Below, piece after piece: positions 3,904 to 32,800 of a stretch of 64,000 nt of DNA. Each line of letters begins with the position of its first letter. Within the stretch, counting starts at the first letter, position 1. The notes under the pieces were generated by a model. That model did not search any database, was not told the DNA's origin, and worked only from the letters and a program-made list of their open reading frames with translations. Location of the stretch: IMG/VR virus record IMGVR_UViG_3300032323_001214, positions 62,001 through 126,000 of that record, one strand, 5' to 3'. Made by a program: the position numbers and the translations under genes.

Positions 3904-5976
3904 TTATTCTACGTCCACCGCAGTATTATAGCTTGTAAAGCCGTTTTCTTTCACAACTTTTAGAACATTTGGTACACGACCTGCTAGTTCTTCACGGTGT
4001 GAAACAAGCCAAATAGATTTTTGTCGTCTACGTGACATGTCTTTGAGAATTGCTAGACTGTTCTCAACACCCATTGTGTCAAGACCACTGTCAATCAATT
4101 CGTCAATGAATAGTGTGTTGATCGGACTGTATAATGATTCCCAAACGTCACGGAATGCAAAACTCAAGCCAAGAATCAATCGATTGCGTTCACCACGGCT
4201 CAAGTTATCAAAGTCAAGTTCACGACCCAGTTCTGTAATTTCAACCTGCAAATCATTCTTAAAGATAACTTGATGTGGTAAACCAATTTTGTCTAGGTAA
4301 TGTGTCAATCTTGCGTTTAGATAACTCAAGTTTTGGTCAATAATCTTCTTACGAACAAAACTATCTTTGCTAGTTAACAAATCTAATAAGAACTTTTGAT
4401 GTTCCATTGTACGTGTTAATTTATTGATAGCTTCAAAGTCAATTGCTTGTAGTGCTTGTGTTTCCATTTCAGACACTTGTTCTGCATATGGATCAGTTTC
4501 TTGTGACTTGTTATCAATCTGATTAAGAATGTTAGCAACTTCACTTGAATGTTTGATTGCTTCTGCTTCTGTGTCATAATGGGTAACAGGTTGCGGACCT
4601 AAAACTATAGGAGTCAATTCATTTAGTTGTTCACTAAATGGATTAGTTTCTTGCTTTTTATCTTCCCAAACTTTCTTCAAGTTAGCTACGTCACCACTGT
4701 GACGTATCGCCTCTGCCTCAGTTTTATACGATGGTTTAGGTTTAGGACCCAATTCTTTAATTAGTGCTTGATTATTTGCTAGTTGTTCTTCTAAATCGGC
4801 TAAATCAGCCTTAGCATTTTCAAGCAGTGTGGTCTTTTGTAATGTAACTTCTAAATGCTTGTCATCATAGAAATCTTGTCCACAAGCATAACACTTATGA
4901 TCCTCAAGTTCTTTAACTTCCCGAACCAATTTATCAATTAATTTTTTTTCTTTTGTGATACTTTTGGTTAGGGTATCAATTATTGTTGCGATAGATTTTT
5001 GTTCGGCATCGTCATGCATCCACTCTTTTAAATCACTCCATGCTTTAAGTTCAGCATCAATATCATATTCATTCTTAAGCAGGTAAGCAGTATGTGCAAC
5101 AGAAACATCACTGTCGTGTTTCTGTTGCCAAGCAGTAGAACGTGCAACCAATGCATTGTATGCATCTTGTGCTTCTTTCTGTTTATTCCAGATGTTTAAA
5201 TCTTTGTGCGCTTGTAGTTCTATGGAAATATCAATCTTGCTCAACTCATCATATTGAAGTGCCAAACTGATTAAATCATCATCATGTTTCTTCAACCACA
5301 ATGTTTGTCTGCGTTTTAGTGCATCAATCTGTTCTTTAACTCGCTTGTTAGCTTCTTCAATGGCTTTAACTCTGAATTCTTCACTCTGAATATCATCTTT
5401 GCTACGGCGAATCATTTCTTTAATGATTTCAGCCTTTTCACTCAACAGTGTGATGCCCATTAGTTGTTCAATGATATCCTTTTGTTCGTTGTTCTTTAGT
5501 GCAAGAAACGGTTCGCTATATGTGTTCAATACAACGATATGACGGAACATGTCAGGAGACATGTTGATAACTTTTTCGATTGCCGCCTGTGTTTCTTTAT
5601 TTTCACCTTGCTGATCTTCAGTAGCCTTCTCCTGAACATTATTTACGTAGAACTTAAGAATGTTTGGCTTACGACCGCGCTCAATTTTATAGCTAATACC
5701 ATTGACGTTGAACGTCAATGTAACAAGCATAGCCTTCCCATTAGTACGATTAACTAAATTATCTTTACGAATGTTATTAATGGGTGTACCAAATAGTGCA
5801 TAGGATAGTCCTTGAATAAGTGTTGTCTTACCCGTACCGTTTCTAGCACCATCACCACCTAAGTCTAAGTTCTCACCTAGAATAAGTGTTAAGTCTTTCT
5901 TGTCAAAGTCAACTGCTTGTGTTACTGCGCCGATGCTTAAAAAATTTCGTAAAGTTATGTTTTGGAGTGTTATCAT
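3904..5976 (-). CDS. gp46: Rad50/SbcC-like recombination ATPase (T4 gp46-like)
   Basis: NFLSIG start, Walker A GTGKTT, coiled coils with central zinc hook CYAC, signature LSRGE, Walker B FIDE, H-loop VSH. Confidence 0.93.
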   Translation of the reverse strand: MITLQNITLRNFLSIGAVTQAVDFDKKDLTLILGENLDLGGDGARNGTGKTTLIQGLSYALFGTPINNIRKDNLVNRTNGKAMLVTLTFNVNGISYKIERGRKPNILKFYVNNVQEKATEDQQGENKETQAAIEKVINMSPDMFRHIVVLNTYSEPFLALKNNEQKDIIEQLMGITLLSEKAEIIKEMIRRSKDDIQSEEFRVKAIEEANKRVKEQIDALKRRQTLWLKKHDDDLISLALQYDELSKIDISIELQAHKDLNIWNKQKEAQDAYNALVARSTAWQQKHDSDVSVAHTAYLLKNEYDIDAELKAWSDLKEWMHDDAEQKSIATIIDTLTKSITKEKKLIDKLVREVKELEDHKCYACGQDFYDDKHLEVTLQKTTLLENAKADLADLEEQLANNQALIKELGPKPKPSYKTEAEAIRHSGDVANLKKVWEDKKQETNPFSEQLNELTPIVLGPQPVTHYDTEAEAIKHSSEVANILNQIDNKSQETDPYAEQVSEMETQALQAIDFEAINKLTRTMEHQKFLLDLLTSKDSFVRKKIIDQNLSYLNARLTHYLDKIGLPHQVIFKNDLQVEITELGRELDFDNLSRGERNRLILGLSFAFRDVWESLYSPINTLFIDELIDSGLDTMGVENSLAILKDMSRRRQKSIWLVSHREELAGRVPNVLKVVKENGFTSYNTAVDVE

Positions 5977-6179
5977 TTTAATTTTCTAAAAAAACTATCT
6001 TTGGCTAATTTTTCTGCCTTCAATGTCTTTTCTATAATACTTTCTACTCTAAGTTTGACTCTAATCAATCTATGTGTTTCTCTTAAACTACCTATATATG
6101 GTTGTGTTTTTGATAGTTCAGATAACGCAATACCCAAGTGCTTGTTTATTTTTATAAGAGAATCTAATTCGTAGTTCAT
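5973..6179 (-). CDS. Hypothetical protein, 68 aa
   Basis: Fills the gap between gp47 and gp46 with 4-bp overlaps at both ends. Confidence 0.65.
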   Translation of the reverse strand: MNYELDSLIKINKHLGIALSELSKTQPYIGSLRETHRLIRVKLRVESIIEKTLKAEKLAKDSFFRKLK

Positions 6180-7189
6180 AGATTGTTGTAGATGTCCAAA
6201 AGAATCTTCTTATCAAAATTATTTGATTCAATTGCATTAATTTGGTCAATGATAATTTGATCTACACTTTCAAACTTTAGTCCGTCACTAGTTTGACCAT
6301 TTTCATTTGTTTCTACTTTCATAGGTATCAATGCCATTTCACGTAGTTTATGTTCTGGTATCCATGTCTCACGCAAGAAGTTTGCTTCTTCGTATGAGAT
6401 TTCAATGTCAAGATGTACTCTAACATGACTGTCAATCAATAGCAAGCCCTCAGGGTTTTCTAAAATGTCACTTAGTTTATGAACACGAAACACGGGTTGT
6501 CTAGGCCATGTATGAAAGACTGGTTCACTTCCCCATTCCAATATCATCATGCCACGTGCGTCATCACCCGCATCAGCATAGTTATGTGGGAATGCATTAC
6601 CGATATACCAAATGTTCTTACGTGCTTGACGTTTATGAAAATGACCACTGAATACTTTCTCAAACCCGGTCATATGGTCCTCGTTAATTTCACCGTGATC
6701 GGGCATCTCTACCATAGCATTCATATAAAAGCGTGGTAGTTCTAAATGACCAAATAAGTATTTGCCACCCATCTTCTGTAGTTTTTTGTAATCTTCTTGT
6801 ACAAGCCAGGGTGCAATAACCACATCTCCTTGACTGAAGAAGTCGTTGATGATTTTAACATTTGGTAAATGCTTACCCCACTCAACACTATGAACGTCCC
6901 GCTTATCACGATAATAAAGATCGTGATTGCCTGGTATAAAATACACAGTGTCAAAGTTAGCACTTAGTTTTTCTAATGCTTGTAAGCCAAACTGTAGTGT
7001 ATGAATGTTAATACTTGCACGATGGTGATTATAATCGCCCAAGAAGAAACATGTCTCACATCCCTCACTCTTTGCTTTTTTAATGAACCAATCTACGAAA
7101 TCAGCACAGTCTTGATTGTGTTGTAGGCTGTTAGACTTCAATCCAAAATGCACGTCGGTGAAAACCGCTGCCTTCTTAAATAAATTCAT
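6176..7189 (-). CDS. gp47: Mre11/SbcD-like recombination nuclease (T4 gp47-like)
   Basis: Metallophosphoesterase motifs TDVHFG, LGD, GNHD, GHLE, SGHFH. Confidence 0.93.
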   Translation of the reverse strand: MNLFKKAAVFTDVHFGLKSNSLQHNQDCADFVDWFIKKAKSEGCETCFFLGDYNHHRASINIHTLQFGLQALEKLSANFDTVYFIPGNHDLYYRDKRDVHSVEWGKHLPNVKIINDFFSQGDVVIAPWLVQEDYKKLQKMGGKYLFGHLELPRFYMNAMVEMPDHGEINEDHMTGFEKVFSGHFHKRQARKNIWYIGNAFPHNYADAGDDARGMMILEWGSEPVFHTWPRQPVFRVHKLSDILENPEGLLLIDSHVRVHLDIEISYEEANFLRETWIPEHKLREMALIPMKVETNENGQTSDGLKFESVDQIIIDQINAIESNNFDKKILLDIYNNL

Positions 7190-7947
7190 TCATTGTCCTT
7201 AAGTTTGTATCCATTATAAAATTCCCCGTTTTTTGATTTTTCTCGAATAGTACTCATCCACTGACCTGTTTGTCTTTGGAACTCACTGATACTAGTATAC
7301 ACTTCTACTTCCCCGGAGTCACGCAATAAGGTAACCTTCTTAGATGTTTTTTCAGCACCTTTTAATCCGTTCTGTATTCTATATTTTTTTGCGAGTTCTG
7401 GATTTTCTTTTTGCCATTGTTTTATTCCAGCACTATGTTTTTCTTTTGCTCCGGCTACTGAATCATAATATCCTTTTAAGGTAGTTGATCTGTTTTTACA
7501 GGCATCATCTGTGTGGCAGTGCCTAATCATTTCTTGTCGTTCTTCAAGAGTAGTACCCTCCCATTTTTTCTTGTTGAACAACCTCCATTTTTCACCTAAT
7601 GCTTCTCTAATAATTACTACTTCTTCATCAGTGAACATAGTTAAATCATTGTTCAATCCATCACCACCGGGTGTGCTATTAAGACCATTCTTATAAGAAT
7701 CGTATTGACTAATATACTTTATTTCTGCTAATGCGAGTTGAGATATAGAATCAAATCCAGAGTCAATTACTTCATATACACAATTGCTGGGTCCATATTG
7801 GTTAATAGCGTTGTGTAATTTTCCTTTAGGATCAGTGATTGATTCCTTGCAGTGTGTTTTCCAACGAGATTTTTTATACTCAGGTTTTGTGTCTAACCCA
7901 ATGTATACTTTCCCTAAAGGAACAACGGTGATTTTGTAAATGAACAT
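7186..7947 (-). CDS. Free-standing GIY-YIG (Seg-like) homing endonuclease
   Basis: FIYKIT...VYIG, RWKTH, conserved E and GLN motifs in the N-terminal ~100 aa; basic C-terminal DNA-binding-like region; inserted between the sigma factor and gp47. Confidence 0.8.
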   Translation of the reverse strand: MFIYKITVVPLGKVYIGLDTKPEYKKSRWKTHCKESITDPKGKLHNAINQYGPSNCVYEVIDSGFDSISQLALAEIKYISQYDSYKNGLNSTPGGDGLNNDLTMFTDEEVVIIREALGEKWRLFNKKKWEGTTLEERQEMIRHCHTDDACKNRSTTLKGYYDSVAGAKEKHSAGIKQWQKENPELAKKYRIQNGLKGAEKTSKKVTLLRDSGEVEVYTSISEFQRQTGQWMSTIREKSKNGEFYNGYKLKDNE

Positions 7948-7951
7948 TTTA

Positions 7952-7993
7952 TAGCCCTAAATGAATGATATACTTATTTATCATTTAGGGCTA
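7952..7993 (-). promoter_or_regulatory. RBS-sequestering hairpin with an internal late promoter
   Basis: 13-bp perfect inverted repeat TAGCCCTAAATGA/TCATTTAGGGCTA; GATAAATA at 7982-7975 inside it; the 3' arm holds the AGGG RBS and ends 4 nt before the ATG. Confidence 0.8.
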
Positions 7994-8002
7994 AAATATT
8001 GA

Positions 8003-8911
8003 TTATTCTTCGTACACAGTGGATACTGATGCACCTGCCCCTTGACGTGACCAACTTGGATTTAGTCCATTCATTTCTAAAATGTCATCTCTGATATTTT
8101 GATTTCGTTTTTCTGAATTAAGTACACGACAGAAGCTATTGGTTATAGCGGCTGTGTAATATGCGAATGGGTTTGCTGACTTGGCTTCATTGAATCGTAA
8201 CCCAACATATGTTAATTGTAAAATAGCACTATTACGCATTTCGTCATTGTATGTGTACCCACGCCAATTATACTTCATTGCATATTTTTCACACATCATA
8301 ATATACATACGGGCTAGTTTATTAGTTACTTGACCGTGATCTTTGCTGAACTCACCACTTTCTAAATCACCTTTCCAATGACTTTTCCCCACACAATAGA
8401 ATGTATTGTTACTGTCAATTTTATAATGTTGGAATGGTGGGAAGTTTACTTTGACATGAACCATATCATCCACTTCAGCTTTGGTAGTGATATCTTCTAA
8501 ATCTGCAAAAATTGCGTCTGGATCTTCTTCTTCAAAATCAAAAATATCTTTTGCTGTTTTTTTCTTAACTGTTTTGCGGGGCTGTTTTGGTGCAACCGGT
8601 ACATGATCCCAAGTCATTACTCGAAACACTAAATCTTTAACATCTATCGATTCCGAGCTAACTGCGTCTTTACTACCCTGTTCAAGACTCAAACGTAAAG
8701 CACGTGTTTCTTTTGCTTGCTGAATAGTTTCAGGTTTGAATGCATACTCTAAACTTTTTTCTATAGCTTCTTGCGGCATGTCTACAATGAAATCATATCT
8801 ATGATAGTCAGGTTGTGCAAAATGACAATATGAATTTTTGCTTTCGTGTATTTCTTTTAAAATGTCTTTATTATTTAGGTAATTGACAGGTTTTCTTGAT
8901 GGTAGGGACAT
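8003..8911 (-). CDS. gp55: Late-transcription sigma factor (T4 gp55-like)
   Basis: VNYLNNKDILKEI, NWRGYTYNDEM, RFNEAKSANPFAYYT motifs; upstream of gp47/gp46 as in T4-like phages; GGAG RBS. Confidence 0.85.
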   Translation of the reverse strand: MSLPSRKPVNYLNNKDILKEIHESKNSYCHFAQPDYHRYDFIVDMPQEAIEKSLEYAFKPETIQQAKETRALRLSLEQGSKDAVSSESIDVKDLVFRVMTWDHVPVAPKQPRKTVKKKTAKDIFDFEEEDPDAIFADLEDITTKAEVDDMVHVKVNFPPFQHYKIDSNNTFYCVGKSHWKGDLESGEFSKDHGQVTNKLARMYIMMCEKYAMKYNWRGYTYNDEMRNSAILQLTYVGLRFNEAKSANPFAYYTAAITNSFCRVLNSEKRNQNIRDDILEMNGLNPSWSRQGAGASVSTVYEE

Positions 8912-8936: not shown

Positions 8937-8965
8937 ATTATAGCAAGAGTGTTGCTGAAAAGCAA
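8937..8965 (-). promoter_or_regulatory. sigma70-type promoter for the late sigma operon
   Basis: Minus strand TTGCTT (8965-8960), 17-nt spacer, TATAAT (8942-8937). Confidence 0.7.
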
Positions 8966-8998
8966 CATAACTGGGTAAAATTTGGTGATTTTTATAGC

Positions 8999-9014
8999 GA
9001 TAAATATATTTAGT
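8999..9014. promoter_or_regulatory. Abutting divergent late promoters
   Basis: GATAAATA at 8999-9006 (+) directly followed by TATTTAGT at 9007-9014 (ACTAAATA on -). Confidence 0.6.
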
Positions 9015-9026
9015 AAAGGTATAATC

Positions 9027-10328
9027 ATGTCAGAAGCCGAATTACAAGCACAAGCAGAATATTTGTCAGAACAGTTAGTCGAACTAAAGCGCCAGCTGGC
9101 TGAAGCAGAACTAATAGGAAATCCACAGGAAATTGCTACCTATGAATCTCAGATAGCGGCAGTAGAACTAGAATTACAACAAGTATTGCTAAAACTACGA
9201 AACATAACTACCACTGACACGATAAATACACCAGGTGTAGTGGTAACGCCTATTCCTGTCAACCAAGAAGATACTGTAAATTATAACAACTCTACTACGA
9301 GTACGGCATATGACGATGACGGTAATTTAAATCCTGGATGGGCAGTAGATGAACTTGGAACAGTTTATTTTGCTGGATTTGGACCACCATTAACAAAACC
9401 GGCTACTATTGAAGAAAGTGTTTTTAACCCTAGACAAGATGTTCAAGAAAGCGTATTTGATCCAACAACTGGCAGCGCTACGGGATCGTCACGTGGTTTA
9501 GGTGGTGAAACTAATCAAGCCAGATCAACTGCAACAGCACAGGACACCGCTAACTTTGAAACCAAACAAGATTGGAGAGTTAGATTAAGTCTAGCACCAA
9601 GCGCAACATACTTGTATAAAGCAGAAAATCCAGGAATTCTTAAGCCACTGAAAAACACTGATGGGGTAATTTTCCCGTACTTACCATCAGTCACTGTAAG
9701 TTATATGGCTAATTATGACCTGCAAGATTTAACACATAGTAACTATAAAGCATACCAATATAGAAATAGCAGTGTCGAACAAGTTCAAATAACAGGGGAT
9801 TTTACTGCACAAGACACAGCAGAAGCAAATTATATGCTCGCAGTAATTCATTTTTTCCGTAGTGTCACAAAAATGTTTTATGGGCAAGATCAAAATCCTA
9901 AGCCAGGAACACCCCCACCATTGGTATTCTTGTATGGTTTGGGTGACTTTCAATTTAACGCACATCCATTAGTAGTTACTACTTTTAATTATAGCCTACC
10001 TAATGATGTGGACTATATAAGAGCAAGTGCACCAACATTACCTGCTGGGATAAGTACTGCAGGATATACACCAGCATCAAACAGTACATCACCAACTAAT
10101 GTTAGATTGAATAATAGTGGATTGAATACTGGAGCAACAGCATCATCACCGCAATTTCAAACAAACAGTAATTCACAACCAACATATGTACCAACTAAAA
10201 TGCAGATTCAAATAACAGCGTTACCAATGGTAACTAGAAATGATATTAGTAATAATTTCAGTCTAAAACAATATGCTACTGGTGCATTATTACGTGGTAC
10301 ACAAAATAAACGAGCAGGAATTTGGTAA
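9027..10328 (+). CDS. Baseplate/tail-tube initiator-like structural protein
   Basis: Start moved to ATG 9027 (AAAGG RBS, late promoter upstream). GVIFPYLP, HSNY, GTPPPLVFL, PLVVTTFNYSLPNDVDY resemble tube-fold proteins of contractile tails; precedes the LysM/gp53 gene. Confidence 0.6.
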   Translation: MSEAELQAQAEYLSEQLVELKRQLAEAELIGNPQEIATYESQIAAVELELQQVLLKLRNITTTDTINTPGVVVTPIPVNQEDTVNYNNSTTSTAYDDDGNLNPGWAVDELGTVYFAGFGPPLTKPATIEESVFNPRQDVQESVFDPTTGSATGSSRGLGGETNQARSTATAQDTANFETKQDWRVRLSLAPSATYLYKAENPGILKPLKNTDGVIFPYLPSVTVSYMANYDLQDLTHSNYKAYQYRNSSVEQVQITGDFTAQDTAEANYMLAVIHFFRSVTKMFYGQDQNPKPGTPPPLVFLYGLGDFQFNAHPLVVTTFNYSLPNDVDYIRASAPTLPAGISTAGYTPASNSTSPTNVRLNNSGLNTGATASSPQFQTNSNSQPTYVPTKMQIQITALPMVTRNDISNNFSLKQYATGALLRGTQNKRAGIW

Positions 10329-20834: not shown

Positions 20835-23800
20835 ATGGCCACAAGTACAAGAATTAGAACACTAAACTTTTTACCAGACATTTTCAAAACAACAACCAAT
20901 GCTCAGTTTTTAGCGGCTACATTGGATCAAATTGTTGACCAACCAAATACGGAACGTATTGAAGGTTATATTGGTAGTAAGTTTGGCTACGGCATAAATG
21001 CGAAAAACAAATATGTAATTGAACCAACTAAAACACGAACAGATTATCAACTAGATCCAGGTGTAGCTTTCTTAAAGAAAGATACAGGTATTGCACAAGA
21101 TTTTATCAGTTATCCTGGCATAATTGATGCATTGAAGCTTGAAGGTGGTATCACAAACAATAATGATAGATTGTTTGAAAGCCAAATCTATTCATGGGAT
21201 AGCTTCACTGACTTAGATAAAATAATTAACTTCAATCAATATTATTGGTTACCAGAAGGTCCTGATCCAGTAACAATTTCTACCGACATTGTTTTCAATG
21301 CATCTGATTATATTATTACTGATGCCCCAAATGGTTACAACGTAACTGCTGATGGACAAGCACAGGGTTCTACAAATCCTACGCTAACGTTATTGCGTGG
21401 CGGAACATATAGATTTAGTGTCAACCAAGATAGTCAATTTTGGATTCAAGGCGCCCCGGGCGTTACTGGCTTAGACCCCACACAAACAAACGTTCAAACA
21501 CGTGATGTATTTGGTGTTTCTAATAACGGTGAGGAAGTAGGTATAGTGACATTTACTGTTCCAGCAAAAGATGCACTAGATGAATATAATTTTCCAGGAA
21601 ATAACATAGTTGATGTAGTATCCACTACTCCGTACGACCAAATTAACGGACAACTACTAAGTACTGTTGGAAATATTGATGGTATTAGTTCACTAAATGG
21701 CCTTACTGTAATGTTTTACAATACAGGTGTACCCAATGAACAAGGTTATATAAGTAATTTCTTTGATGAAACTAACTTTGACGTAAACAGTAATTTGGTA
21801 CCGGCACAAACAATTACTATTAGCTCCACTAATTCTACTGGAAATGTAATAACATGTTCTTCTACTGCTAACTTAGTAGTGGGACAAACTATAACATTTT
21901 CTGGATCTACTTTTGGTGGAATACTAGTATACGATGCCGTATTTCCAAATACAATATATTATGTAAATTCTATCATTAGCCCCACTGAATTTACTATTGC
22001 ACAACAATTATTTGATGTTGGTGTAACCCCTTTCAGTGTATCGACTGCTAGTGGTTCAGGTTTAATCGCTAACATTAATCAAGGCTTAAATGAAGAAGGT
22101 TATTACACTGATGTAACCGCAACATTTTACCGTATAACTTATGCGGGTAGCGTGAGTGATCCAGTATTAAGATTAGTAGAAGTTGGACCTATTCCTACTA
22201 ATCAAAAAATTACTGCACAATATGGTACTGCTTGGATCGCTAGAAATTTTTATAGAAACGTTGCGGGAACAATTAATTTAGTTCCATATAACAGTGCAAT
22301 ATTAGATGTGTTATATTATCAAGATGGTACTTCCGGTAATAAGGTTGGTCAATTACGTATAATTAATAGCAACACTACTAATCGTATTGATGTAGTAGAA
22401 GATATATTAGGTAAAAAACAATATACAGCACCAAACGGTGTACAATTTACCAATGGCTTAAAAGTGGTATTTCAAGGTGACATCTATCCTGTAAGCTACG
22501 AGAATGTTCAATATTATGTTGAAGGTGTAGGTACTGCCATTCAATTAATACCGGTATCAGATTTAATAGCACCTGAACCGTTTACCTCAAGCACATATAT
22601 ACCATATGATACTTTACCTTATGATATTGGTAACTATGACAGTAACTTATATATACCAGTAACTCCAGATTACATTACTATCGCTAGAAACAGTATTAAT
22701 AAAAATCCATGGTCACGTAGCAATCGTTGGTTCCATATTGATGTTATCACTGCTACTGCTACATACAATAATAACCCAAATTTTGTAACTATAGCAGCCA
22801 CACAAGAAAATAAAGCAAAACGACCAATCATTGAATTCTATCCTAACTTAAGATTATTCAACTCAGGATATTTAGGTAAAGCTCCAATTGACTTTATTGA
22901 TTTTAGAACAACTGATGCGTTTGAATACGTTGCGGGTCAAGAAAATTATTACCCGGACGTTGAAGTATATACTGCATACACAGCTACAATTAATAGCGCA
23001 GTTTCAAGCACGACTACTACAATCTCATTATCTACGTCAGATATTGTTGGTACATTTCAAGTTGGTCAATATATAAATGACACAACTAATTTGTTGCCAA
23101 CTAATGCACAAATTAGTAATATCAGTGTTGCATCTGGCATCACTACACTGACAGTCACTTGGTTAGGCAATTACACATTTGGTAGCACTACTGTAGCTTC
23201 ATTGATTGCTAACGATGGTCAGAATGATAACTATGCATTATTTGATGGTGCCAGAATTGTTTTTGCCGCAGACACAAATGAAAATGTAAAAGACAAAATA
23301 TATGTGGTAAGATTTTCTTCAATCACACCACTATCAACTCCTGTGATTACTCTTACCCCAGCAGATGACGGTGAAGTTCTTCCATTAGAACAAACTGTTG
23401 CATTTAGAGGATTTAATTATAAGGGTAAAGATTTCTACTTTGATAGTATTGATTGGTTAGAATCACAACAAAAAACAACAGTTAATCAACCTCCGTTGTT
23501 TGATATCTTCGATGAAAATGGTATAAGCTTATCAAATAGTGAGTACTATGTTGGTACATCTTTTAAGGGTAATAAATTATTTTCATATGGATTGGGATCA
23601 GGATTAGATGATTCCATCTTAGGCTTCCCAATACGATATAGTTCAATAGACAACGTAGGTGATATTAGTTTTGATGTATCACTTAACGCAGACACATTCA
23701 ATTATGTTAGAGGGACTACGCCCATAACTCAAAGAGTTAACACAGGATATGTTTATAACTACACCGTTTTAGGTGAACAGTATAGACAAATTGGTTGGGA

Positions 23801-26800
23801 AACTGCAGTGGGCAGTAGTGTTCAGTATCAACTATTTGAATTTAATTACTTTGCAAGTTCACCTACAACCACATACACATGTGACGTATCAATGCTTAGT
23901 CCCGATGCATCAGCATGGCCTACCTTGCAAGTATATGTGAATAACGTACTACAAACAGGAACATACACAGTAACTGTTGGACCAAATAGTACCGTTATTA
24001 ATCTTGAAGTACCTGATCCATTAGTAGATACAGTAGTGCAAGTATCAATTTTGAGTAATCAAGTAAGTAAAATTGGATATTATTCTGTACCTATTAACTT
24101 GAATAATAACCCATTGAACCAAGATATAGTTGTAGCAAACGTAGGTGATATTCGTGGTCAATATCAAAGTATCTTCTACAATAACCCTGACATTACCGGT
24201 GTTGTATTTGGTGCTAACAATTATCGTGACTTGGGCAATCTTGTTCCATGGGGCAATCGAATTATACAGAACAGCGCAAGCTTAGTATTGCCTGGCACGT
24301 TCCTTCGCAAACAAAATCACAATCTATTCAATGCGTTAATGTTTAACAGCAAAGAATATATTAATTTCAAAACATTGTTAGTTGGCACAGTTAACAACAC
24401 TGACTATAGCCGACACTATCCTCCTGCATATATGCTAGACGATGCACTGGATCAAATAACAGCTAGTAAAACAGAAGATGAATCATTCTTCTGGAGCGAT
24501 ATGTTACCGAATAAAGCAGCCTATATTACTAACACATATAGTTTTGCAAATAGTTTGGACGTATCGATATATCCATTGAGTAAGGTTTATAACTATGATA
24601 CCGCAAATTACAATGGTATTTTAGTATACTTAACAAGAACAACCAGTGGCGTAACAACGACCACTCAATTGATAAAAGGAATCGACTACACCGTAAGTTC
24701 AACTAGTCCTGCATTAACAGTTGAAACTGACTTGTTGCCCGGTGATCAGATTACTATCAATGAGTATAATCAAACATATGGTAGTTACTGCCCCAATACA
24801 CCCACTAAGTTAGGTCTATATCCAAGCACAATTCCTCAAGTTATACTAGATAGTAACTATGTAACACCTACCTATTTTATAGTAGGACATGATGGATCAT
24901 ACAACAAATTGTATGGTGATTATATCGATGGACAATTGATTGATTTTAGAGATCAAGTATTGTTAGAATTTGAAAAACGTGTCTACAATAACTTAAAATT
25001 AAGTAATGTTATTCCTATTAATGAATCGGATGTTATACCTGGGTTTTGGAGAACAACTGACTACAGTTTAGATGAAATAAAACAGATATATTCTATAAAC
25101 TTTTTAAACTGGGTAGGACAGAATCGTGTTAATTACAAAAAACAAGTTTACAATGCAAATAATCAATACACTTACAACTACAATCGTAGCGGTAACAAAA
25201 TAAACAGAGATCCAATTCCACAAGGTTATTGGAGAGGTATATATGAATACTTCTATGACACAAGTAATCCTGATACTAAACCATGGGAAATGTTAGGTTT
25301 TGCAAATCAACCAACATGGTGGGCATCGAGATACGGATCAGCACCCTATACAAGTGATAACTTAGTATTGTGGGGGGATTTAGCTGCCGGTTATATTTGG
25401 AATGACGGCGTGCCATACGTCAATGAAGCATATGTAAGACCTGAATTGTTACAAGTGTTGCCGGTCGATACTGCAGGTAATTTGGTATCACCGTTTATAG
25501 CAATCGTAGGTAATTACTATAACCAATCATTTGTGAGAGATTGGGCTGTAGGAGATGTTGGTCCAACAGAATTTAGCTATCGTAGAAGTAGCACATGGCC
25601 ATTTGATCTAATGAAGATGTATGCGTTAACTAAACCTGCAGAGTTTTTTAACTTAGGGGTTGACATTGACAACTACAAATACAATGCAGAATTTAATCAA
25701 TATCTGGTTAACGACAGAAGCCACTTAGTAATTAGTGATGTAGAAATATATGGTAATGGTACTCCTAAAACAAGTTACATAAATTGGATTGTTGACTACG
25801 AGAAACAATTAGGGGTTGACGCAACAAAGAATATTACTGAACTACTAGATAACTTGGATGTAAGGTTAGTGTATCGTTTGGCTGGATTCTCTGACAAGAG
25901 TTTATTAAAGTTCTACGTTGAAAAGGGAACACCTAATAGCAATAACGCATCATTATTGATTCCTGATGAAAGCTTTGGTGTATTATTATATGACAATCAA
26001 CCATTCGAACGTATCGTTTACAGTGGGGTGATAGTTCAAAGCACGCCTGAGGGTTATTTCAAAGTATATGGTAACTCACAAACTAATGCATATTTTACTA
26101 TATCGAATCCTAAAATAAATGGTAACTATGACAGAATTACTTTGCAGAATTTGTCTGTACAAGTACCTAAAGATTATTATGATACTACCACTATAGTATC
26201 ATATGGAACCGAATTTTACTCATTACAAGAAGTTGCAGTATTTTTAAGTTCATATGGTAGATACTTGTCTACTCAGGGCGTATTGTTTGATCAAATCGAA
26301 ACTGGTCTAGAAGTTTCATGGAATCAAATGGTTGCTGAATTCTTATATTGGGCACAGAGTGGATGGGAACCGGGAAGTCTTATCAATTTAAATCCGGCAG
26401 CTAGTTTGATTTCTATAAACAAAGACAGCTATATTGTTCAACCATTAACACTACAACAACAAAACTTTATTCTAAATCAAAACTTATATCCAATACAATC
26501 CGTTGATATGTCAATTGTGCGTGATGGTACGTTGTTTACAGCACAACCTTTAAATCAAGGTGACACTGTTGCGTATGGACAATTTAACATCAGTAATTTT
26601 GAACATGGTATTGTATTTGATAATGTAACATTATTTGATGATATCATTTATAATTTGATAACAGGTTTGCGCCAACAACGAATTATTGTTCGTGGTACTA
26701 AAACTGCTGAGTGGAACGGTACTATTGATGCTCAAGGTTTTATTCTTAACCAAGACAATATTATTGAGTGGAATAATGAGACAAAGTATACCACTGGTTC

Positions 26801-29800
26801 TATTGTCAAATACAAAAATAAGTATTGGATAGCAGTAAAGATAATACAAGCTAGTGAAGTATTCGATGAACGTGATTGGAAAGAAACAGATTATAATGAA
26901 ATACAAAAAGGTCTATTACCAAACTCAAGTACACGTAGCTATGAGAGCACATTGTATTATGATGTAAACAAGGCCAACCTAGAAAATGATGCTGACTTGT
27001 TAAGCTTCAGTTTAATTGGATATCGCCCACGTGATTATTTGGCTCTTGTTGACCTAACTGACATTACACAGATTAATGTATATAAAAACTTTATTAAGAA
27101 TAAAGGTACATTGAATGCAGTATCTGCATTTAAAGGCGCAAACTTACCACAGGGTGGTATTGATTATGAAGTATACGAGAACTGGGCAATTAAAGCAGGT
27201 GAATTTGGAGGTGTATTAAACAGTAACTTTGTAGAGTTTAAGTTAAACCAATCTGAATTAACTGGTAACCCATCTACTGTAGAATTAACTAACGGGGCGT
27301 ACACTCAAGGAATACAACAACAAGTTCCGTTGTATAACATTTTCAATTACGGTAGACCAATAAATTCTCCTAATGTATTACCCACACTACCAATAGATAC
27401 TCCTAATGTATTGTTTCCAGACGCAGGCTACGTAAGTTTTGAAGATGTCAAAACGTATGCATACTATTACTTTGGATTGACTGGTGCTGAAACACCTATA
27501 ACAAGACTATATCAAGGTGATTATGTTTGGATCGCTAACTTACAAGGTACATGGCAGATCATGTCACCATTATCTTTGGGTACCGTAATAGAAGCAAGAA
27601 ATCTAGCAAATGGTACTATTACTCTACGATTTGCAACAGCACACGCATTAACAAAGTATTCAGCATTTGCAGTAACTAACTTTGATAATAGAGTCAATGG
27701 ATACTATACTGTTCAAAATGTCATTGATCCGTTTACTGTATTAGTTTCTGCTAATTTGAATCCATCAGTGCAAACCATTACAGGTCAAGGTATTGGCTTT
27801 AAGTTCCAATCACATCGTGCTCAAGAACCTAGCGACATTATCAATTTACCATTGCTTAACAACGAATTTGTAAAAAACAAAGTATGGGTCGATCTTGGCA
27901 ACGAAGGTAGCTGGCAAGTTTATCGTAAGAGTTTGAACTACACATATAGTAATGAAATTGTAAAAGCTAATTCACAATCATTTGGTAGTGCAGTAGCATA
28001 TACTGACAATATTGGTTATTTAATTGCTGATGCAGATGCCGGCGTAATGTACCGATATATCTATAATGCATTGACCGAACAGTATGAGCTATTCCAAACA
28101 TATACCGGATCTGCGTCTTTTGGTACAACTATAAGTTATGCAGGTGATACGTTTGTCGTATCACAACCTACAGGATCAACCGCAAGTGATAGAACTATCA
28201 ATATCTATCAACTGGTATCTACTACGTTGACTGATAGGCTTGAATTAATTCAAGAACCAATTCAAGCACCATCAAGTTCTATAACAAATTGGGGAAGTGC
28301 AACTGCAATTTCCGGAGATCAAAATTGGTTATATGTTTCTGACACTGTGAATAACAGAGTATATGTATATCGTAAATCACAAGTAACTGGAAAATATGAA
28401 TATGTAAACATTATATCAATCACAGGAGTTGGCGGTCTAGATCAATTTGGATATTCATTATCCACAGATTACTATGGATATACTTTAGTAATCGGCACAC
28501 CAGATCAAAACTATAGTTCAACGATTGACAATTCTGGCTACAGCTACATCTTTGATAGACTATATCAGAACTTTGAAGCACAATCTTCAAGTCAACCGTT
28601 CATCCCGTTGTTGTTTAATTTAGCAGTTAATACCAATACTACTACATATAATGCCAGTGCAACTACAGCAGGATCTAACAAAATAAATGTAGATACACTA
28701 CAAGGGTTGACTGTGGGTACTCCATCAGTATTCACTGGTCCTGTGTTTGGTGATATTTCATTGAACACTGTGTATTATATACGTGATACCTTTTCTCCTG
28801 CTAATCAAGTAACACTATCAACTAACAAGTATACAGAAACAGTTGATAATACATATGCAACAGGCAATAAAATTCGTGTAAGTAGTAATTCAGACTTTGT
28901 AGTAAACGCACCAATTGTGTTTTACGGTGAGACAGGTACTTCCAACATTGTATCTGGTACAAAATACTATATAAAATCAATTACAACAGTAACGATTGAC
29001 ACTATTAACTATGATGCTATCACAATATCTACAACGATAGGTGGCTCTACATTTACTGTTTCAAATAGTGACTTGAATGTAACAGCAGTAACATTTGGCA
29101 ATGAAGTAACATTGTCTTCTGATACAGGTACAATGACACTAAATGCACAAACACAACCTGTGTCAGTGTCTGTAAATGGTACAACTATTTCTGAAGATCA
29201 GTATGCAGTAATAGGCAATGTATTAAACATGTACGGTAATATAACAGCCGGTGACATTATTACATTAGATAGTTCAACATTTGTACTGATGCAAACATTA
29301 TCTACGGGAACTACCCCTAGAGTAGGTACACAATTTGGTCAAAGCGTTGCTGTTAATAAATATGCATCAGAAGTTTTAGTTGGTGCACCCTTCCAAATAA
29401 GTGAGACTGCAGGTGAAGGTGCAGTCTATCGATTTACTAACGGTGGCGGCAAATATGGTATGATTACCGGTACCGTCGATTGTAATTTAACATCAAGTGA
29501 AACAATTTTAATTAATGGTTTTGTAGTAACATTGCCTATAGGTGGTGCAACAGGCGCAGCTAATGCTATTAATAAAGCAAACATTACAAACGTTCAGGCC
29601 GCAAATGTTGATGACAAATTAGTAATCAGTCTAGTCAACACATCACTTGCGACCATCAATGACAAGTTAAACATAGCCGCACTAAGTCCCACAGCATATA
29701 CTGGCATGGGTATTGCTCCATATACATTGACACAAACAATTACATGTCCTCATGTTGGTGGTGCTACACAATTTGGTGAAAAAATAAAATTTAATGAGTT

Positions 29801-32800
29801 TGGATCATTCATTGTAAGTGCGCCAGCTGGCACAAGATTTGCAGGCACAACATTTGATTCAACTGATGATGAAAACTTTGATAATGATACAATATTCGAC
29901 AACAACACAACACAATGGGTAGACCCGTTTGCTAATGCTGGCGCAGTATACATGTTTGATTATCTATCAAATTATAATGAAAATTTATTAAACGTTGGTA
30001 ATTTTGTATATGCACAAAGTGTAAATGATATTAATCAAGAATATGGTGATCAACCATATTATGGTCAAGCAATAGATTATAATAACTATACAGTAATAGT
30101 TGGCTCACCACAGTTCAAACCTGCTTTCGTTAATGGGCAAGTAGTTGTTTATACAAATACTGCAGGCGAACAAGACTGGGTTGTGTTCAAAGAATCTAAC
30201 CCAATTGTTGACACATCACGTATTCAAAATGGTTTATTGTATAGTGCAAGCACTAACAATACACTTGAGAATTTAGATTATATCGATCCGTTACAAGGTA
30301 AATTATTGGGCGTTGTGCGTGAGAATATTGACTATGTATCAAACACAGATCCAGCATCATACAACTCACCGAATGCTACAAACAGAGGATCAAGTGTTTG
30401 GGGTTCTCCTCAAATAGGTGAACTATGGTTCGACACAAGCAATACCAGATTTGTGAACTATCATCAACCAGATGTTACCTATAATAGTAAATGGTGGGGT
30501 CGTGTGTTCCCAGGTAGTAACGTGTCAGTTTACTCATGGATTAGCAGTAATGTAGAGCCATCTCAGTATCAAGGACCGGGCGTACCGTACGACACAGATA
30601 ATTATGCTATTGAATTAGTACAAGATGCACGTGGAAGTTTAGTACCACAGTATTTTTATTGGGTACGAAATACAAATATAGTGTTTTCTAAATTAGGAAA
30701 GACTTTATCTGATACTATACTTGAATATTATATTATAAATCCTATAAATTCAGGCATTAGCTACTTTGCACCATTACTACCCAATGCATTTGCACTATAC
30801 AATTCAGATCCATACATCAATAATATTGATACTATATTCCATGTAGGATTTAGCACAGGTACAAACGATGATGTATCACACAGTGTGTATAACTTAATTC
30901 GTGCAAATTATGCAGACGATTTCTTACCTGGTTTACCTGCAACAAATTCATTAGACATACCCGAATCGTTATACGATAGGATGCTTGATAGTTTAGCAGG
31001 CTTGGACGAGACTGGTGCTGTGGTTCCAGACCCATTCTTACCAAAACCAGTACAGTATGGTATCTATGCAAGACCTAGACAAAGTTTCTTTGTTAATAGA
31101 TTTGGCGCGTTACAAAATTACCTACAATATGCTAACGAAGTATTGGCTCAATTCCCGATCACTGAAACTAGAAGTGCTAACTTCTTGTTCCAAGATGGAT
31201 CAGTTAATCCAAGTACAGTGAATAATCCTAATTGGACTGGTGGTACTGAACTATTCTACGATACACAACAATATTGGAATTATATTGATTGGTGGGCTGC
31301 TGGATATAATAACAACACAAAATCAGCATTCCGTGTACCTTTGTACGCAGACCTATCGACATTATCAGTACCATCAGGTACTATAGTTACTGTAGCACAA
31401 AATGGTAATGGTAAGTTTGAAGTATACAGAAGCAATGATGATAATACATGGACCCGTATTGGTCTAGAAGACGGTACAATCGAATTCACTAACACACTTT
31501 GGGACTATGAAGAAGCTCGCTTAGGTTTTGGTGACAACTTCTTTGACACCACACCATATGATTCTTTCCCTAGCCAAGAAACTCGATACATATTACGAGC
31601 ATTGAATGAGCAAATCTATACACAAGAGTTGCAAATTTACAGAAATAAGAGTTTAATTCTGTTATTTGAATATATTCAGTCAGAAACTATTGAAGGTCAA
31701 AATTATTTGCCATGGTTAAACAAAACCTCATTTATCGATGTTGGTCATACTATTCGTGAATTGTTACCTATCGAAGTATTCCAAACTGACAATCAAGATT
31801 TCTTGCAAGGTTATTTAAACGAAGTTAAGCCATATCACGTAGTGATCAAAGAATTCTTGTTTAAGTATACAGGTCAAGATGTGTATGACGGGGATATAAC
31901 TGACTTTGATCTACCGGCACAATATAATTCAACCATACAAAAATTTGTGTCACCTGAACTAGTGTATGCAAACCCAAGTTCTGCATATGAATTCTTGCCA
32001 ACAGATCCTATATGGGAAACACAGGCATACAATCAATGGTTTGACAATTTTGGATTAAGCATCACTGGTGTTAATGGTTATCCTATAACTACCTTGTCAT
32101 CATATATTTCCTTGAACAGTAGTTCATTTACAGTTGACAACAGTTTTGGTTTCCCGATCAACGGCGTAGTTTTAATTGACGCAGAGTTGATTGCGTATTC
32201 TAACGTAGACCGTAGTACTAACACATTGAGTGGATTGACACGTGGTGTAGACGGTACAGCTATTACACAACACATACCCGGGGCACAATTAACTATTGAT
32301 CTTCCTGCTGTATTGTTATTAGATGGCGGCCGCGGTTATACTGAACCACCTAGAGTTACTGCATATTATGATGAGACATTATATGGACCACCAAAACGAC
32401 CAGCGCAACTTGAGGCAGTCATGTTTTTGGATTCAGTATTATCAGTAAATGTAATAGATCCAGGAGCTGGATACCCGGTGTTGCCTGAAATTAGAATCGA
32501 TCCATCTATCTCAATATTGTTCAATTCTACACAAGTAAGCACATTAACAAATACTATCGTGTTGGATACACCTTTGTTACAAACAGGTGATTTGGTTAAG
32601 TATATTGTGGGTGAGAACACCACTGCAGTGGGTGGATTAGATGACGGTCAATATTACTATATAAACGTATTAGAAACTGCTCCGGCATTTACGATTGCGC
32701 TATACACTAACTACGGCGATGCAGTAAATGACCAGCGCAGAGTTGTGTTGTTCGATCAAGGTATTGGTTCTGATAATAAATTAAATTTAAGTGCTAGAGC

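What the first reader, a model, noticed from the sequence alone, without database searches (positions are those of the whole stretch)
7945..7995. T4-style timing switch on the homing endonuclease: RBS-occluding hairpin relieved by an internal late promoter
Seen: read-through mRNA from the sigma gene would form a perfect 13-bp stem burying the AGGG RBS. GATAAATA sits at the 5' arm/loop junction, so a late transcript would lack the 5' arm. Known: T4 I-TevI and related endonucleases are confined to late expression by this design. It suggests an active, domesticated mobile endonuclease in a distant phage lineage.
Basis: partly seen in the sequence, partly recalled or inferred. Interest (0 to 1): 0.6.

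Follow-up and report, generated by a model that had tools for sequence, protein, structure and literature searches.

The report
Late-only switch on phage homing endonuclease
A selfish endonuclease gene in an uncultured freshwater giant phage carries the regulatory device known from phage T4: a hairpin hides its ribosome site on early transcripts, and a late promoter inside the hairpin frees it. The device is ordinary in kind but unusually well supported, because it is conserved across dozens of relatives.

Summary
All features lie on the minus strand. A perfect 13-bp stem (7993-7981 / 7964-7952) buries AGGG (7958-7955). A 7-bp outer helix also pairs the ATG (7947-7945). GATAAATA (7982-7975) spans the 5' arm/loop junction. 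This is the only perfect stem of 13 bp or more in the 250-kb record.

GATAAATA is the most enriched 8-mer upstream of genes in this genome. It precedes baseplate, tail-tube, tail-fibre and other virion genes, so it is the phage's gp55-type late promoter.

The gene is a free-standing GIY-YIG homing endonuclease. It sits in an ~815-bp cassette that replaces the ~55-bp spacer between the late sigma (gp55-like) and the gp47/SbcD-like gene. Most relatives lack the cassette.

Homologues of 37-96% identity occupy the same junction. About 40 of 48 distinct upstream regions keep the same hairpin, promoter and ribosome-site geometry. Compensatory changes occur at 12 of 19 pairs.

The T4-style timing switch is therefore strongly supported by comparison, but no transcript ends were available. 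It is a new member of a known kind. "Domesticated" is not supported: the element is polymorphic.

The parts
8003..8911 (-). Late-transcription sigma factor (gp55-like, 302 aa), the upstream gene whose transcripts would read into the hairpin
   Evidence: phrog_12791 E 5.9e-74 and phrog_234 E 3.3e-22; 41-44% identity to sigma of PA5oct and Phosso jumbo phages
8937..8965 (-). Sigma70-type promoter of the sigma gene (TTGCTT-N17-TATAAT with TG extension)
   Evidence: Read in sequence; same class as other TTGAC-N17-TGnTATAAT sites before genes; function inferred
7994..8000 (-). 5' strand of the outer 7-bp helix (pairs with 7949-7943, which includes the AUG)
   Evidence: MFE fold; coordinates checked
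7981..7993 (-). 5' arm of the perfect 13-bp stem
7975..7982 (-). GATAAATA, predicted gp55-type late promoter at the 5' arm/loop junction
   Evidence: Top enriched 8-mer upstream of genes, 25 of 36 copies, P 2.5e-29; precedes structural genes; ATAAATA nearly invariant in 45 of 48 homologous leaders
7965..7980 (-). 16-nt loop; a late start is predicted near 7969 (about 6 nt after the motif, by analogy with T4)
   Evidence: Geometry from sequence; start position is inference from T4 knowledge, not mapped
7952..7964 (-). 3' arm of the stem, containing the Shine-Dalgarno AGGG (7958-7955)
   Evidence: GG of the SD invariant in 48 leaders
7186..7947 (-). Free-standing GIY-YIG-type homing endonuclease gene (253 aa)
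   Evidence: phrog_314 E 2.7e-18 and phrog_5123 (GIY-YIG motif) E 8e-12; presence/absence polymorphism; dN/dS 0.04-0.17
7181..8001 (-). Mobile cassette (hairpin, late promoter, endonuclease and a new start region for gp47) that replaces the ancestral ~55-bp spacer
   Evidence: Homology to the near-isogenic empty allele L014 breaks at 8002 and resumes at about 7180; contigs in three runs join 7180 to 8002
6176..7189 (-). gp47 / SbcD-like nuclease subunit; its ATG overlaps the endonuclease stop (ATGA) and it has its own SD, AAGGA, at 7200-7196
   Evidence: phrog_100 E 1.7e-62; sequence
3904..5976 (-). gp46 / SbcC-like subunit, completing the T4-like 55-47-46 gene order
   Evidence: phrog_77 E 4.5e-105

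Best explanation
This is a T4-type temporal translation switch carried by a mobile GIY-YIG homing-endonuclease cassette inserted between the late sigma gene and gp47. Transcripts that start upstream come from the sigma gene's sigma70-type promoter or, in some relatives, from an early-type promoter retained just before the hairpin. These transcripts contain both arms, so a 13-bp stem plus an outer helix pairs the Shine-Dalgarno and the AUG, and the endonuclease is not translated. Such transcripts can still reach gp47, which has its own ribosome site. Once the gp55-like sigma is made, RNA polymerase starts at GATAAATA in the hairpin top. The late mRNA begins in the loop and lacks the 5' arm, so its ribosome site is open and the endonuclease is made late. 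Shown here: the stem, its rarity, its covariation, the promoter motif and its link to structural genes, and the cassette boundaries. Inferred: the start site, the timing, and the translational effect.
For: The hairpin is stable and unique. Predicted SD-AUG accessibility is 0.13 on read-through RNA and 0.69 on RNA starting 5-8 nt after the motif; eight homologues give 0.05-0.25 versus 0.48-0.73. GATAAATA is the top enriched upstream 8-mer. It lies about 16-31 nt before tail fibre, baseplate wedge, tail tube, head-tail adaptor and virion genes, and before 6 of 8 endonuclease-like ORFs (Fisher P 2e-5). ATAAATA is the predicted late motif of related Rak2-like jumbo phages (PMC5259590), and NATAAATA is that of cyanophages (PMC2984593). 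No terminator-like site lies between sigma and the endonuclease. The module travels with the endonuclease: empty alleles have a different spacer, and L087/L108 retain the ancestral spacer plus three gp47 codons ahead of the cassette. Across 48 distinct leaders, 12 of 19 pairs show double changes (81 cells). The covariation score is 0.233 versus 0.117 +/- 0.009 in shuffles (0 of 500), and slid registers give at most 0.07. ATAAATA and the GG of the SD carry 1.7-2.0 bits while the rest of the loop carries about 0.45 bits. Synonymous sites are saturated (dS 1.9-3.1) between copies whose arms are identical. Several relatives place a TTGACN-N17-TAnnnT promoter directly before the hairpin. The design is documented for I-TevI, I-TevII, I-TevIII, segB and mobE (PMC2988022, PMC3014915).
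Against: There are no transcript 5' ends, expression data or protein data, and no public RNA run holds the locus. AGGG is a weaker Shine-Dalgarno than the AAGGA typical of this genome. G:U (20) and A.C (17) departures in the core stem show no strand bias, so covariation alone cannot separate a sense-RNA helix from a DNA-level inverted repeat. A ribosome terminating at the sigma stop, 9 nt before the 13-bp stem, could open the outer helix and give some early leak. A weak sigma70-like site inside the endonuclease ORF (7322-7294) could serve gp47, so read-through is not strictly required. No gp45-clamp homologue was found in the 67%-complete record.
Confidence: 0.8

Rival explanations
1. The hairpin damps endonuclease translation at all times to limit toxicity. 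The embedded motif is not used as a promoter, and expression comes from leaky or ribosome-coupled opening of the stem after sigma translation.
For: The sigma stop codon lies only 2 nt before the outer helix. In L087/L108 a 10-codon remnant ORF reads through the 5' arm. No start site has been mapped.
Against: ATAAATA is nearly invariant (45 of 48) in a loop whose other positions are free to vary. The same motif heads structural genes genome-wide. L110/L111 have lost both the motif and the stem together.
Confidence: 0.08
2. The inverted repeat acts at the DNA level as an operator flanking the late promoter. It would be bound by a dimeric repressor or by the endonuclease itself, as in I-TevI autorepression, rather than acting as an RNA hairpin.
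For: The repeat is symmetric around the promoter. Departures show no G:U versus A.C strand bias. I-TevI represses its own late promoter (PMC2988022).
Against: The half-site sequences change freely as long as they stay complementary, which fits base-pairing better than protein recognition. The 3' arm always coincides with the SD at a fixed distance from the ATG. There is no significant similarity between the promoter region and the empty target allele. The covariance model scores the sense strand at 62.7 bits and the antisense strand at 31.1 bits.
Confidence: 0.06
3. The hairpin is a 3'-end element of the sigma mRNA (terminator, stabiliser or RNase III site), and its overlap with the endonuclease start is incidental.
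For: It lies directly after the sigma stop codon. Empty alleles also have a hairpin in this spacer.
Against: No U-tract follows the stem, and the terminator scan finds nothing here. The hairpin belongs to the cassette, not to sigma. In several relatives it lies after an early-type promoter or after gp47 remnants, 100-190 nt from sigma.
Confidence: 0.05

Closest known systems
T4 segB and Aeromonas phage Aeh1 mobE (free-standing homing endonucleases with an RBS-sequestering hairpin and late promoter; PMC2988022, PMC3014915)
   Same: A free-standing endonuclease sits between conserved phage genes and is co-oriented with an earlier transcription unit. A stable hairpin pairs the ribosome site. A T4-type late promoter is placed so that late transcripts lack the 5' strand.
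   Different: The phage lineage differs: an uncultured freshwater jumbo phage whose sigma is 41-44% identical to those of PA5oct and Phosso. The insertion site is the gp55/gp47 junction. The motif is GATAAATA in this genome, where T4 has TATAAATA. mobE is an HNH enzyme. Nothing has been tested experimentally here.
T4 I-TevI (td intron endonuclease; Gott et al. 1988; Gibb and Edgell 2010, as cited in PMC2988022 and PMC3014915)
   Same: It is a GIY-YIG enzyme. The hairpin forms only on early and middle transcripts, and a late promoter just upstream of the ORF gives translatable mRNA.
   Different: I-TevI is intron-encoded, and its regulation protects splicing. It also autorepresses through an operator resembling its homing site. 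No intron was found here and no operator-like similarity.
T4 late genes e (lysozyme) and soc (PMC3014915)
   Same: The promoter-inside-hairpin logic is the same, confining translation to late transcripts. A weaker copy of the design precedes this phage's head-tail adaptor gene.
   Different: Those are phage genes of their own, not mobile elements.

Membership tests
T4-type RBS-sequestering hairpin with embedded late promoter | A stable helix pairs the Shine-Dalgarno and/or AUG on upstream-initiated transcripts | tested here: met
   13-bp perfect stem plus 7-bp outer helix, -21 kcal/mol, z -6.8; SD-AUG accessibility 0.13; unique in the genome
T4-type RBS-sequestering hairpin with embedded late promoter | A gp55-type late promoter is placed so that late transcripts lack the 5' strand of the helix | tested here: met
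   GATAAATA at 7982-7975 ends 6 nt into the loop. The motif is validated as the structural-gene promoter. The same geometry holds in about 40 of 48 homologous leaders.
T4-type RBS-sequestering hairpin with embedded late promoter | The gene is embedded in an earlier transcription unit with no terminator in between | tested here: met
   The sigma gene has a sigma70-type promoter. No terminator-like site lies between them. Relatives have an early-type promoter directly before the hairpin. Actual read-through was not observed.
T4-type RBS-sequestering hairpin with embedded late promoter | A mapped late 5' end inside the hairpin and late-only protein synthesis | not testable with these tools
   No RNA runs hold the locus
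T4-type RBS-sequestering hairpin with embedded late promoter | The helix is maintained by selection (compensatory changes) | tested here: met
   12 of 19 pairs have double changes; score 0.233 versus 0.117 +/- 0.009, 0 of 500 shuffles
Free-standing GIY-YIG homing endonuclease (seg-like) | N-terminal GIY-YIG catalytic module | tested here: inconclusive
   phrog_5123 (GIY-YIG motif) E 8e-12 and phrog_314 E 2.7e-18. FIY...YIG, R28, E75 and N90 are invariant in homologues. Pfam PF01541 gave no hit at E 0.1 or below, and there was no PDB sequence hit.
Free-standing GIY-YIG homing endonuclease (seg-like) | Presence/absence polymorphism at one fixed site between conserved genes | tested here: met
   About 10 of 80 sigma loci carry it, and about 60 have sigma followed directly by gp47. 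Of 80 homologue loci, 60 are flanked by both genes and 18 more by one. Empty and filled alleles occur in the same runs.
Free-standing GIY-YIG homing endonuclease (seg-like) | Cleaves the empty allele and is inherited preferentially | not testable with these tools
   Needs enzyme assays or co-infection crosses
gp55-dependent late transcription (T4 type) | gp55 homologue plus a -10-only TATAAATA-like promoter before structural genes | tested here: met
gp55-dependent late transcription (T4 type) | gp45 sliding clamp and gp33 co-activator | tested here: inconclusive
   PF09116 and PF02916 were not found, but the record is only 67% complete. gp33 was not searched. CBB-type jumbo phages also lack detectable homologues (PMC5259590).
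Intrinsic terminator | GC-rich stem followed by a U-tract | tested here: not met
   The stem is followed by AUAAAAUGUUC, and the scan reports no site here
I-TevI-type autorepression operator | The promoter region resembles the endonuclease's homing site | tested here: not met
   Best local alignments to empty alleles are no better than shuffles. The true homing site is unknown, so the test is weak.

The most novel reading that the evidence does not exclude
The hairpin and late promoter form a portable, co-evolving regulatory module of one endonuclease family that homes specifically to the gp55/gp47 junction across a very large clade of uncultured freshwater jumbo phages. Because the cassette deletes gp47's own promoter, the block on endonuclease translation may exist mainly to let early transcripts pass untranslated to gp47. 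That would be a free-standing analogue of the 'protect the host gene' rationale shown for I-TevI and intron splicing. Natural variants that lost both motif and stem (L110/L111) would then be informative escapes.
Probability: 0.2. Interest if true: 0.55.

Novelty: new member of a known kind. Interest (0 to 1): 0.42.

Why it matters
The finding extends the T4 'better late than early' control of homing endonucleases to a distant, environmentally abundant jumbo-phage lineage. It adds something the T4 cases lack: broad comparative evidence. Dozens of diverged copies show compensatory stem changes together with an invariant promoter and ribosome-site core. It also defines the late promoter motif of this uncultured lineage and marks the gp55/gp47 junction as a homing hot spot. 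Both are useful for annotating such metagenomic phage genomes.

Tried and rejected
- **Genome identity.** Megablast of the locus against GenBank phages found nothing, so the genome has no close cultured relative.
- **Structure and family hits.** The PDB sequence search of the endonuclease gave no hit. Pfam gave no GIY-YIG hit.
- **Known RNA families.** Rfam found no family at the hairpin, and no group I intron near any endonuclease in the genome.
- **Same hairpin elsewhere in the genome.** Folding the leaders of the seven other endonuclease-like ORFs showed none with this hairpin. A covariance model of the module found only this copy. The design is therefore specific to this endonuclease family, although 6 of 8 endonuclease-like ORFs have the late motif.
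- **Autorepressor operator.** No similarity to the empty allele was found.
- **Promoter first base (G or T) versus each phage's own consensus.** GATAAATA is enriched in G000, G001 and G005, but counts in G002-G004 were too low to judge. Inconclusive.
- **Strand bias of G:U versus A.C departures.** None was seen.
- **RNA evidence.** No RNA run holds the locus, and the contig-based read laying cannot show starts.
- **gp45 clamp.** Not found.
- **Other inserts at the same junction in relatives.** These are unrelated ORFs (SGNH-like, others) or reverse-oriented HNH genes without this design.

Full report
**What is there.**
The two genes flanking the finding are on the minus strand. One is a 302-aa late-transcription sigma factor (8911-8003; phrog_12791 E 5.9e-74, gp55-type phrog_234 E 3.3e-22). 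The other is a 253-aa homing endonuclease (7947-7186; phrog_314 E 2.7e-18, GIY-YIG-motif phrog_5123 E 8e-12). Downstream lie gp47/SbcD-like (7189-6176) and gp46/SbcC-like (5976-3904) genes, giving the T4-like order 55-47-46. The window is part of a 249,606-bp IMG/VR viral record that is 67% complete. It has no close cultured relative. Its sigma is 41-44% identical to those of Sinorhizobium phage Phosso and the Pseudomonas PA5oct group, and 36-38% identical to Rak2-like phages. Runs that hold related DNA are lake and freshwater metagenomes.

In the 55-nt spacer, the 5' arm (7993-7981) is the exact reverse complement of the 3' arm (7964-7952), giving 13 bp with a 16-nt loop. An outer 7-bp helix (8000-7994 / 7949-7943) also pairs the AUG. 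AGGG (7958-7955) lies in the 3' arm, 7 nt before the ATG. GATAAATA (7982-7975) has its first two bases in the 5' arm and the rest in the loop. The fold is -21 kcal/mol with z = -6.8. It is the only perfect stem of 13 bp or more with a 3-20 nt loop in the whole record, where Markov-random genomes give 0.1. Its ribosome-site pairing probability ranks 4th of 257 gene starts.

**GATAAATA is a real late promoter motif in this phage.**
- In an unbiased scan it is the most enriched 8-mer in the 70 nt upstream of genes: 25 of 36 genomic copies, P 2.5e-29. Most copies lie 16-31 nt before the start codon.
- The genes it heads include tail fibre, head decoration, baseplate wedge, tail tube, head-tail adaptor and several virion structural proteins. 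They also include the virion gene divergent from sigma, with the motif at 8999-9006 and its ATG at 9027.
- A separate class of TTGAC-N17-TG-TATAAT sites marks sigma70-type promoters. The sigma gene itself has TTGCTT-N17-TATAAT with a TG extension at 8965-8937.
- Published work predicts ATAAATA as the late motif of Rak2-like jumbo phages that carry a gp55-like sigma (PMC5259590), and NATAAATA for T4-like cyanophages (PMC2984593).

**The endonuclease is a mobile cassette, and the hairpin belongs to it.**
- Among 80 related loci found through the sigma protein, about 60 have sigma followed after about 52 nt by gp47. About 10 carry this endonuclease, and about 9 carry unrelated inserts.
- Against the near-isogenic empty allele L014 (sigma 96%, gp47 97% identical), homology stops at 8002 and resumes at about 7180. 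An ~815-bp cassette therefore replaces the ancestral spacer.
- That ancestral spacer holds a different hairpin, overlapping a TTGC...TATAAT promoter about 8 nt before the gp47 ATG.
- Contigs in three lake runs join 7180 directly to 8002, while other contigs in the same runs carry the cassette.
- In L087/L108 the ancestral spacer and the first three gp47 codons are still present ahead of the cassette. The hairpin and promoter therefore arrived with the endonuclease.
- The cassette ends in an ATGA overlap with gp47, which has its own AAGGA ribosome site.

**Comparative test of the design.**
- A profile search found 80 loci with homologues of 37-96% identity. Sixty are flanked by both sigma and gp47, and 18 more by one of them. 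This family is specific to that junction.
- Endonuclease identity often does not track the flanking genes. In L130, for example, it is 53% against 90% and 83%, which indicates repeated invasion.
- Of 48 distinct leaders, about 40 fold into the same architecture. An outer TTTTAA/TTAAAA helix encloses an inner stem, [G/T]ATAAATA sits at the arm/loop junction, and the GG of the ribosome site sits in the 3' arm at a fixed distance from the ATG.
- On this alignment, 12 of 19 pairs show changes on both sides (81 cells). The covariation score is 0.233 against 0.117 +/- 0.009 in shuffles (0 of 500), and slid registers give at most 0.07.
- ATAAATA and the GG carry 1.7-2.0 bits per column, whereas the remaining loop columns carry about 0.45 bits.
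- The arms are identical between copies whose synonymous sites are saturated (dS 1.9-3.1), and the ORF is under purifying selection (dN/dS 0.04-0.17).
- Predicted SD-AUG accessibility rises from 0.05-0.25 on read-through RNA to 0.48-0.73 on RNA starting 5-8 nt after the motif, in all nine copies tested.
- Several relatives place an early-type TTGACN-N17-TAnnnT promoter immediately before the hairpin. L110/L111 have lost the motif and the stem together.

**Mechanism.**
[quoted passage not shown] Upstream-initiated transcripts form the helix and keep ribosomes off the endonuclease. The gp55-type sigma then starts transcription in the loop, giving mRNA without the 5' arm. Because the motif's 3' end already lies beyond the 5' arm, this holds whatever the exact start offset. 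The offset of about 6 nt, near 7969, is taken from T4 knowledge and is not mapped. Since the cassette removed gp47's own promoter, read-through from sigma is the obvious route for early gp47 expression. A weak internal sigma70-like site at 7322-7294 is an alternative.

**What is not shown.**
- No RNA run holds the locus, so the start site, the timing and the translational effect are all inferred.
- G:U and A.C departures are balanced (20 versus 17), so covariation alone does not exclude a DNA-level inverted repeat. However, the fixed coincidence of the 3' arm with the ribosome site argues for the sense RNA. So does the strand asymmetry of the covariance model (62.7 versus 31.1 bits).
- No terminator signature is present, and there is no operator-like similarity to the empty allele.
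- No gp45-clamp homologue was found in the incomplete record.

**Other endonucleases in the genome.**
Six of eight endonuclease-like ORFs have the late motif just upstream (Fisher P 2e-5), but none has this hairpin. Two of them follow intrinsic-terminator-like hairpins. Three, including a 252-aa ORF not yet tested for endonuclease homology, share a different conserved leader stem.

**Verdict.**
This is a new member of a known regulatory kind in a distant lineage. 'Domesticated' is not supported, because the element is polymorphic and behaves as a selfish cassette fitted to the host's transcription programme.

Noticed in passing
L011:4383-4452, L012:10317-10386, L009:~5190-5260 (genome 200383, 224317, ~165190): There is a second conserved leader. 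A late-type motif is followed at once by a stem (AGTGTAGTT...AACTACTCT, with compensatory changes between copies), then TCTAATGC, then an SD and ATG. Three copies occur, each before an ORF: one phrog_655 and one phrog_314 endonuclease, and a 252-aa ORF not scanned for endonuclease homology. There is no Rfam match and no group I intron signal.
   Followed up: partly
L007:7329-7910 (+) (genome 131329-131910): Rfam finds a permuted (two-piece) tmRNA at 78.8 bits, spread over 582 bases of phage DNA, next to another late-promoter endonuclease gene. A phage-borne permuted tmRNA may hint at the host group.
   Followed up: no
L010:5869-5946 (+) (genome 183869-183946): The Rfam 'freshwater-2' RNA motif (61.9 bits) lies directly after a GATAAATA late motif and before a 460-aa gene. 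This places that orphan motif in the 5' leader of a jumbo-phage late gene.
   Followed up: no
window 20835-40097 (+): A single 6,420-aa open reading frame lies within the structural-gene block.
   Followed up: no
L010:13700-13750 (+) (genome ~191700-191748): A weaker copy of the same design precedes the head-tail adaptor gene. GTTTCC lies upstream of GATAAATA and pairs with the GGAAAC of the SD. The ribosome-site pairing probability is 0.82, ranked 6th of 257.
   Followed up: partly
L014-L093, ~4900-4965 (empty sigma/gp47 alleles): The ancestral spacer has its own covarying hairpin, whose 5' arm/loop junction carries TTGC(T/A). It is followed by TATAAT only about 8 nt before the gp47 ATG. This implies an overlapping terminator-like hairpin and promoter, and a nearly leaderless gp47 mRNA.
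   Followed up: partly
L018, L024, L039, L052, L062, L074, L082, L086 (sigma/gp47 junction): The same junction is an insertion hot spot. Some relatives carry forward ORFs overlapping the sigma stop (several with FGCS-type SGNH-like N-termini, one of 335 aa). Others carry reverse-oriented HNH endonucleases. T4 mobB also lies in the 55-47 interval (PMC2988022, Table 1).
   Followed up: partly
L108:~1468-1500 and L087 (relatives): Three retained codons of gp47 fuse to the cassette and create a 10-codon mini-ORF. It reads through the 5' arm and stops at the TAA inside GATAAATAA. Its translation could open the hairpin in those phages.
   Followed up: no
window 8982-10328 (+): The listed TTG start is probably wrong. 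ATG at 9027 lies 20 nt after a GATAAATA motif (8999-9006) and gives a 433-aa virion structural protein. On the opposite strand the same site reads ACTAAATA, another enriched variant, about 95 nt upstream of the sigma ATG.
   Followed up: partly
window 8003-8911 (-): The sigma factor matches T4-size gp55 profiles only over residues 178-290. It carries an N-terminal extension of about 170 aa shared with jumbo-phage homologues.
   Followed up: no
L003:228-911 (-): A cluster of five tRNA genes lies at the start of the genome record.
   Followed up: no
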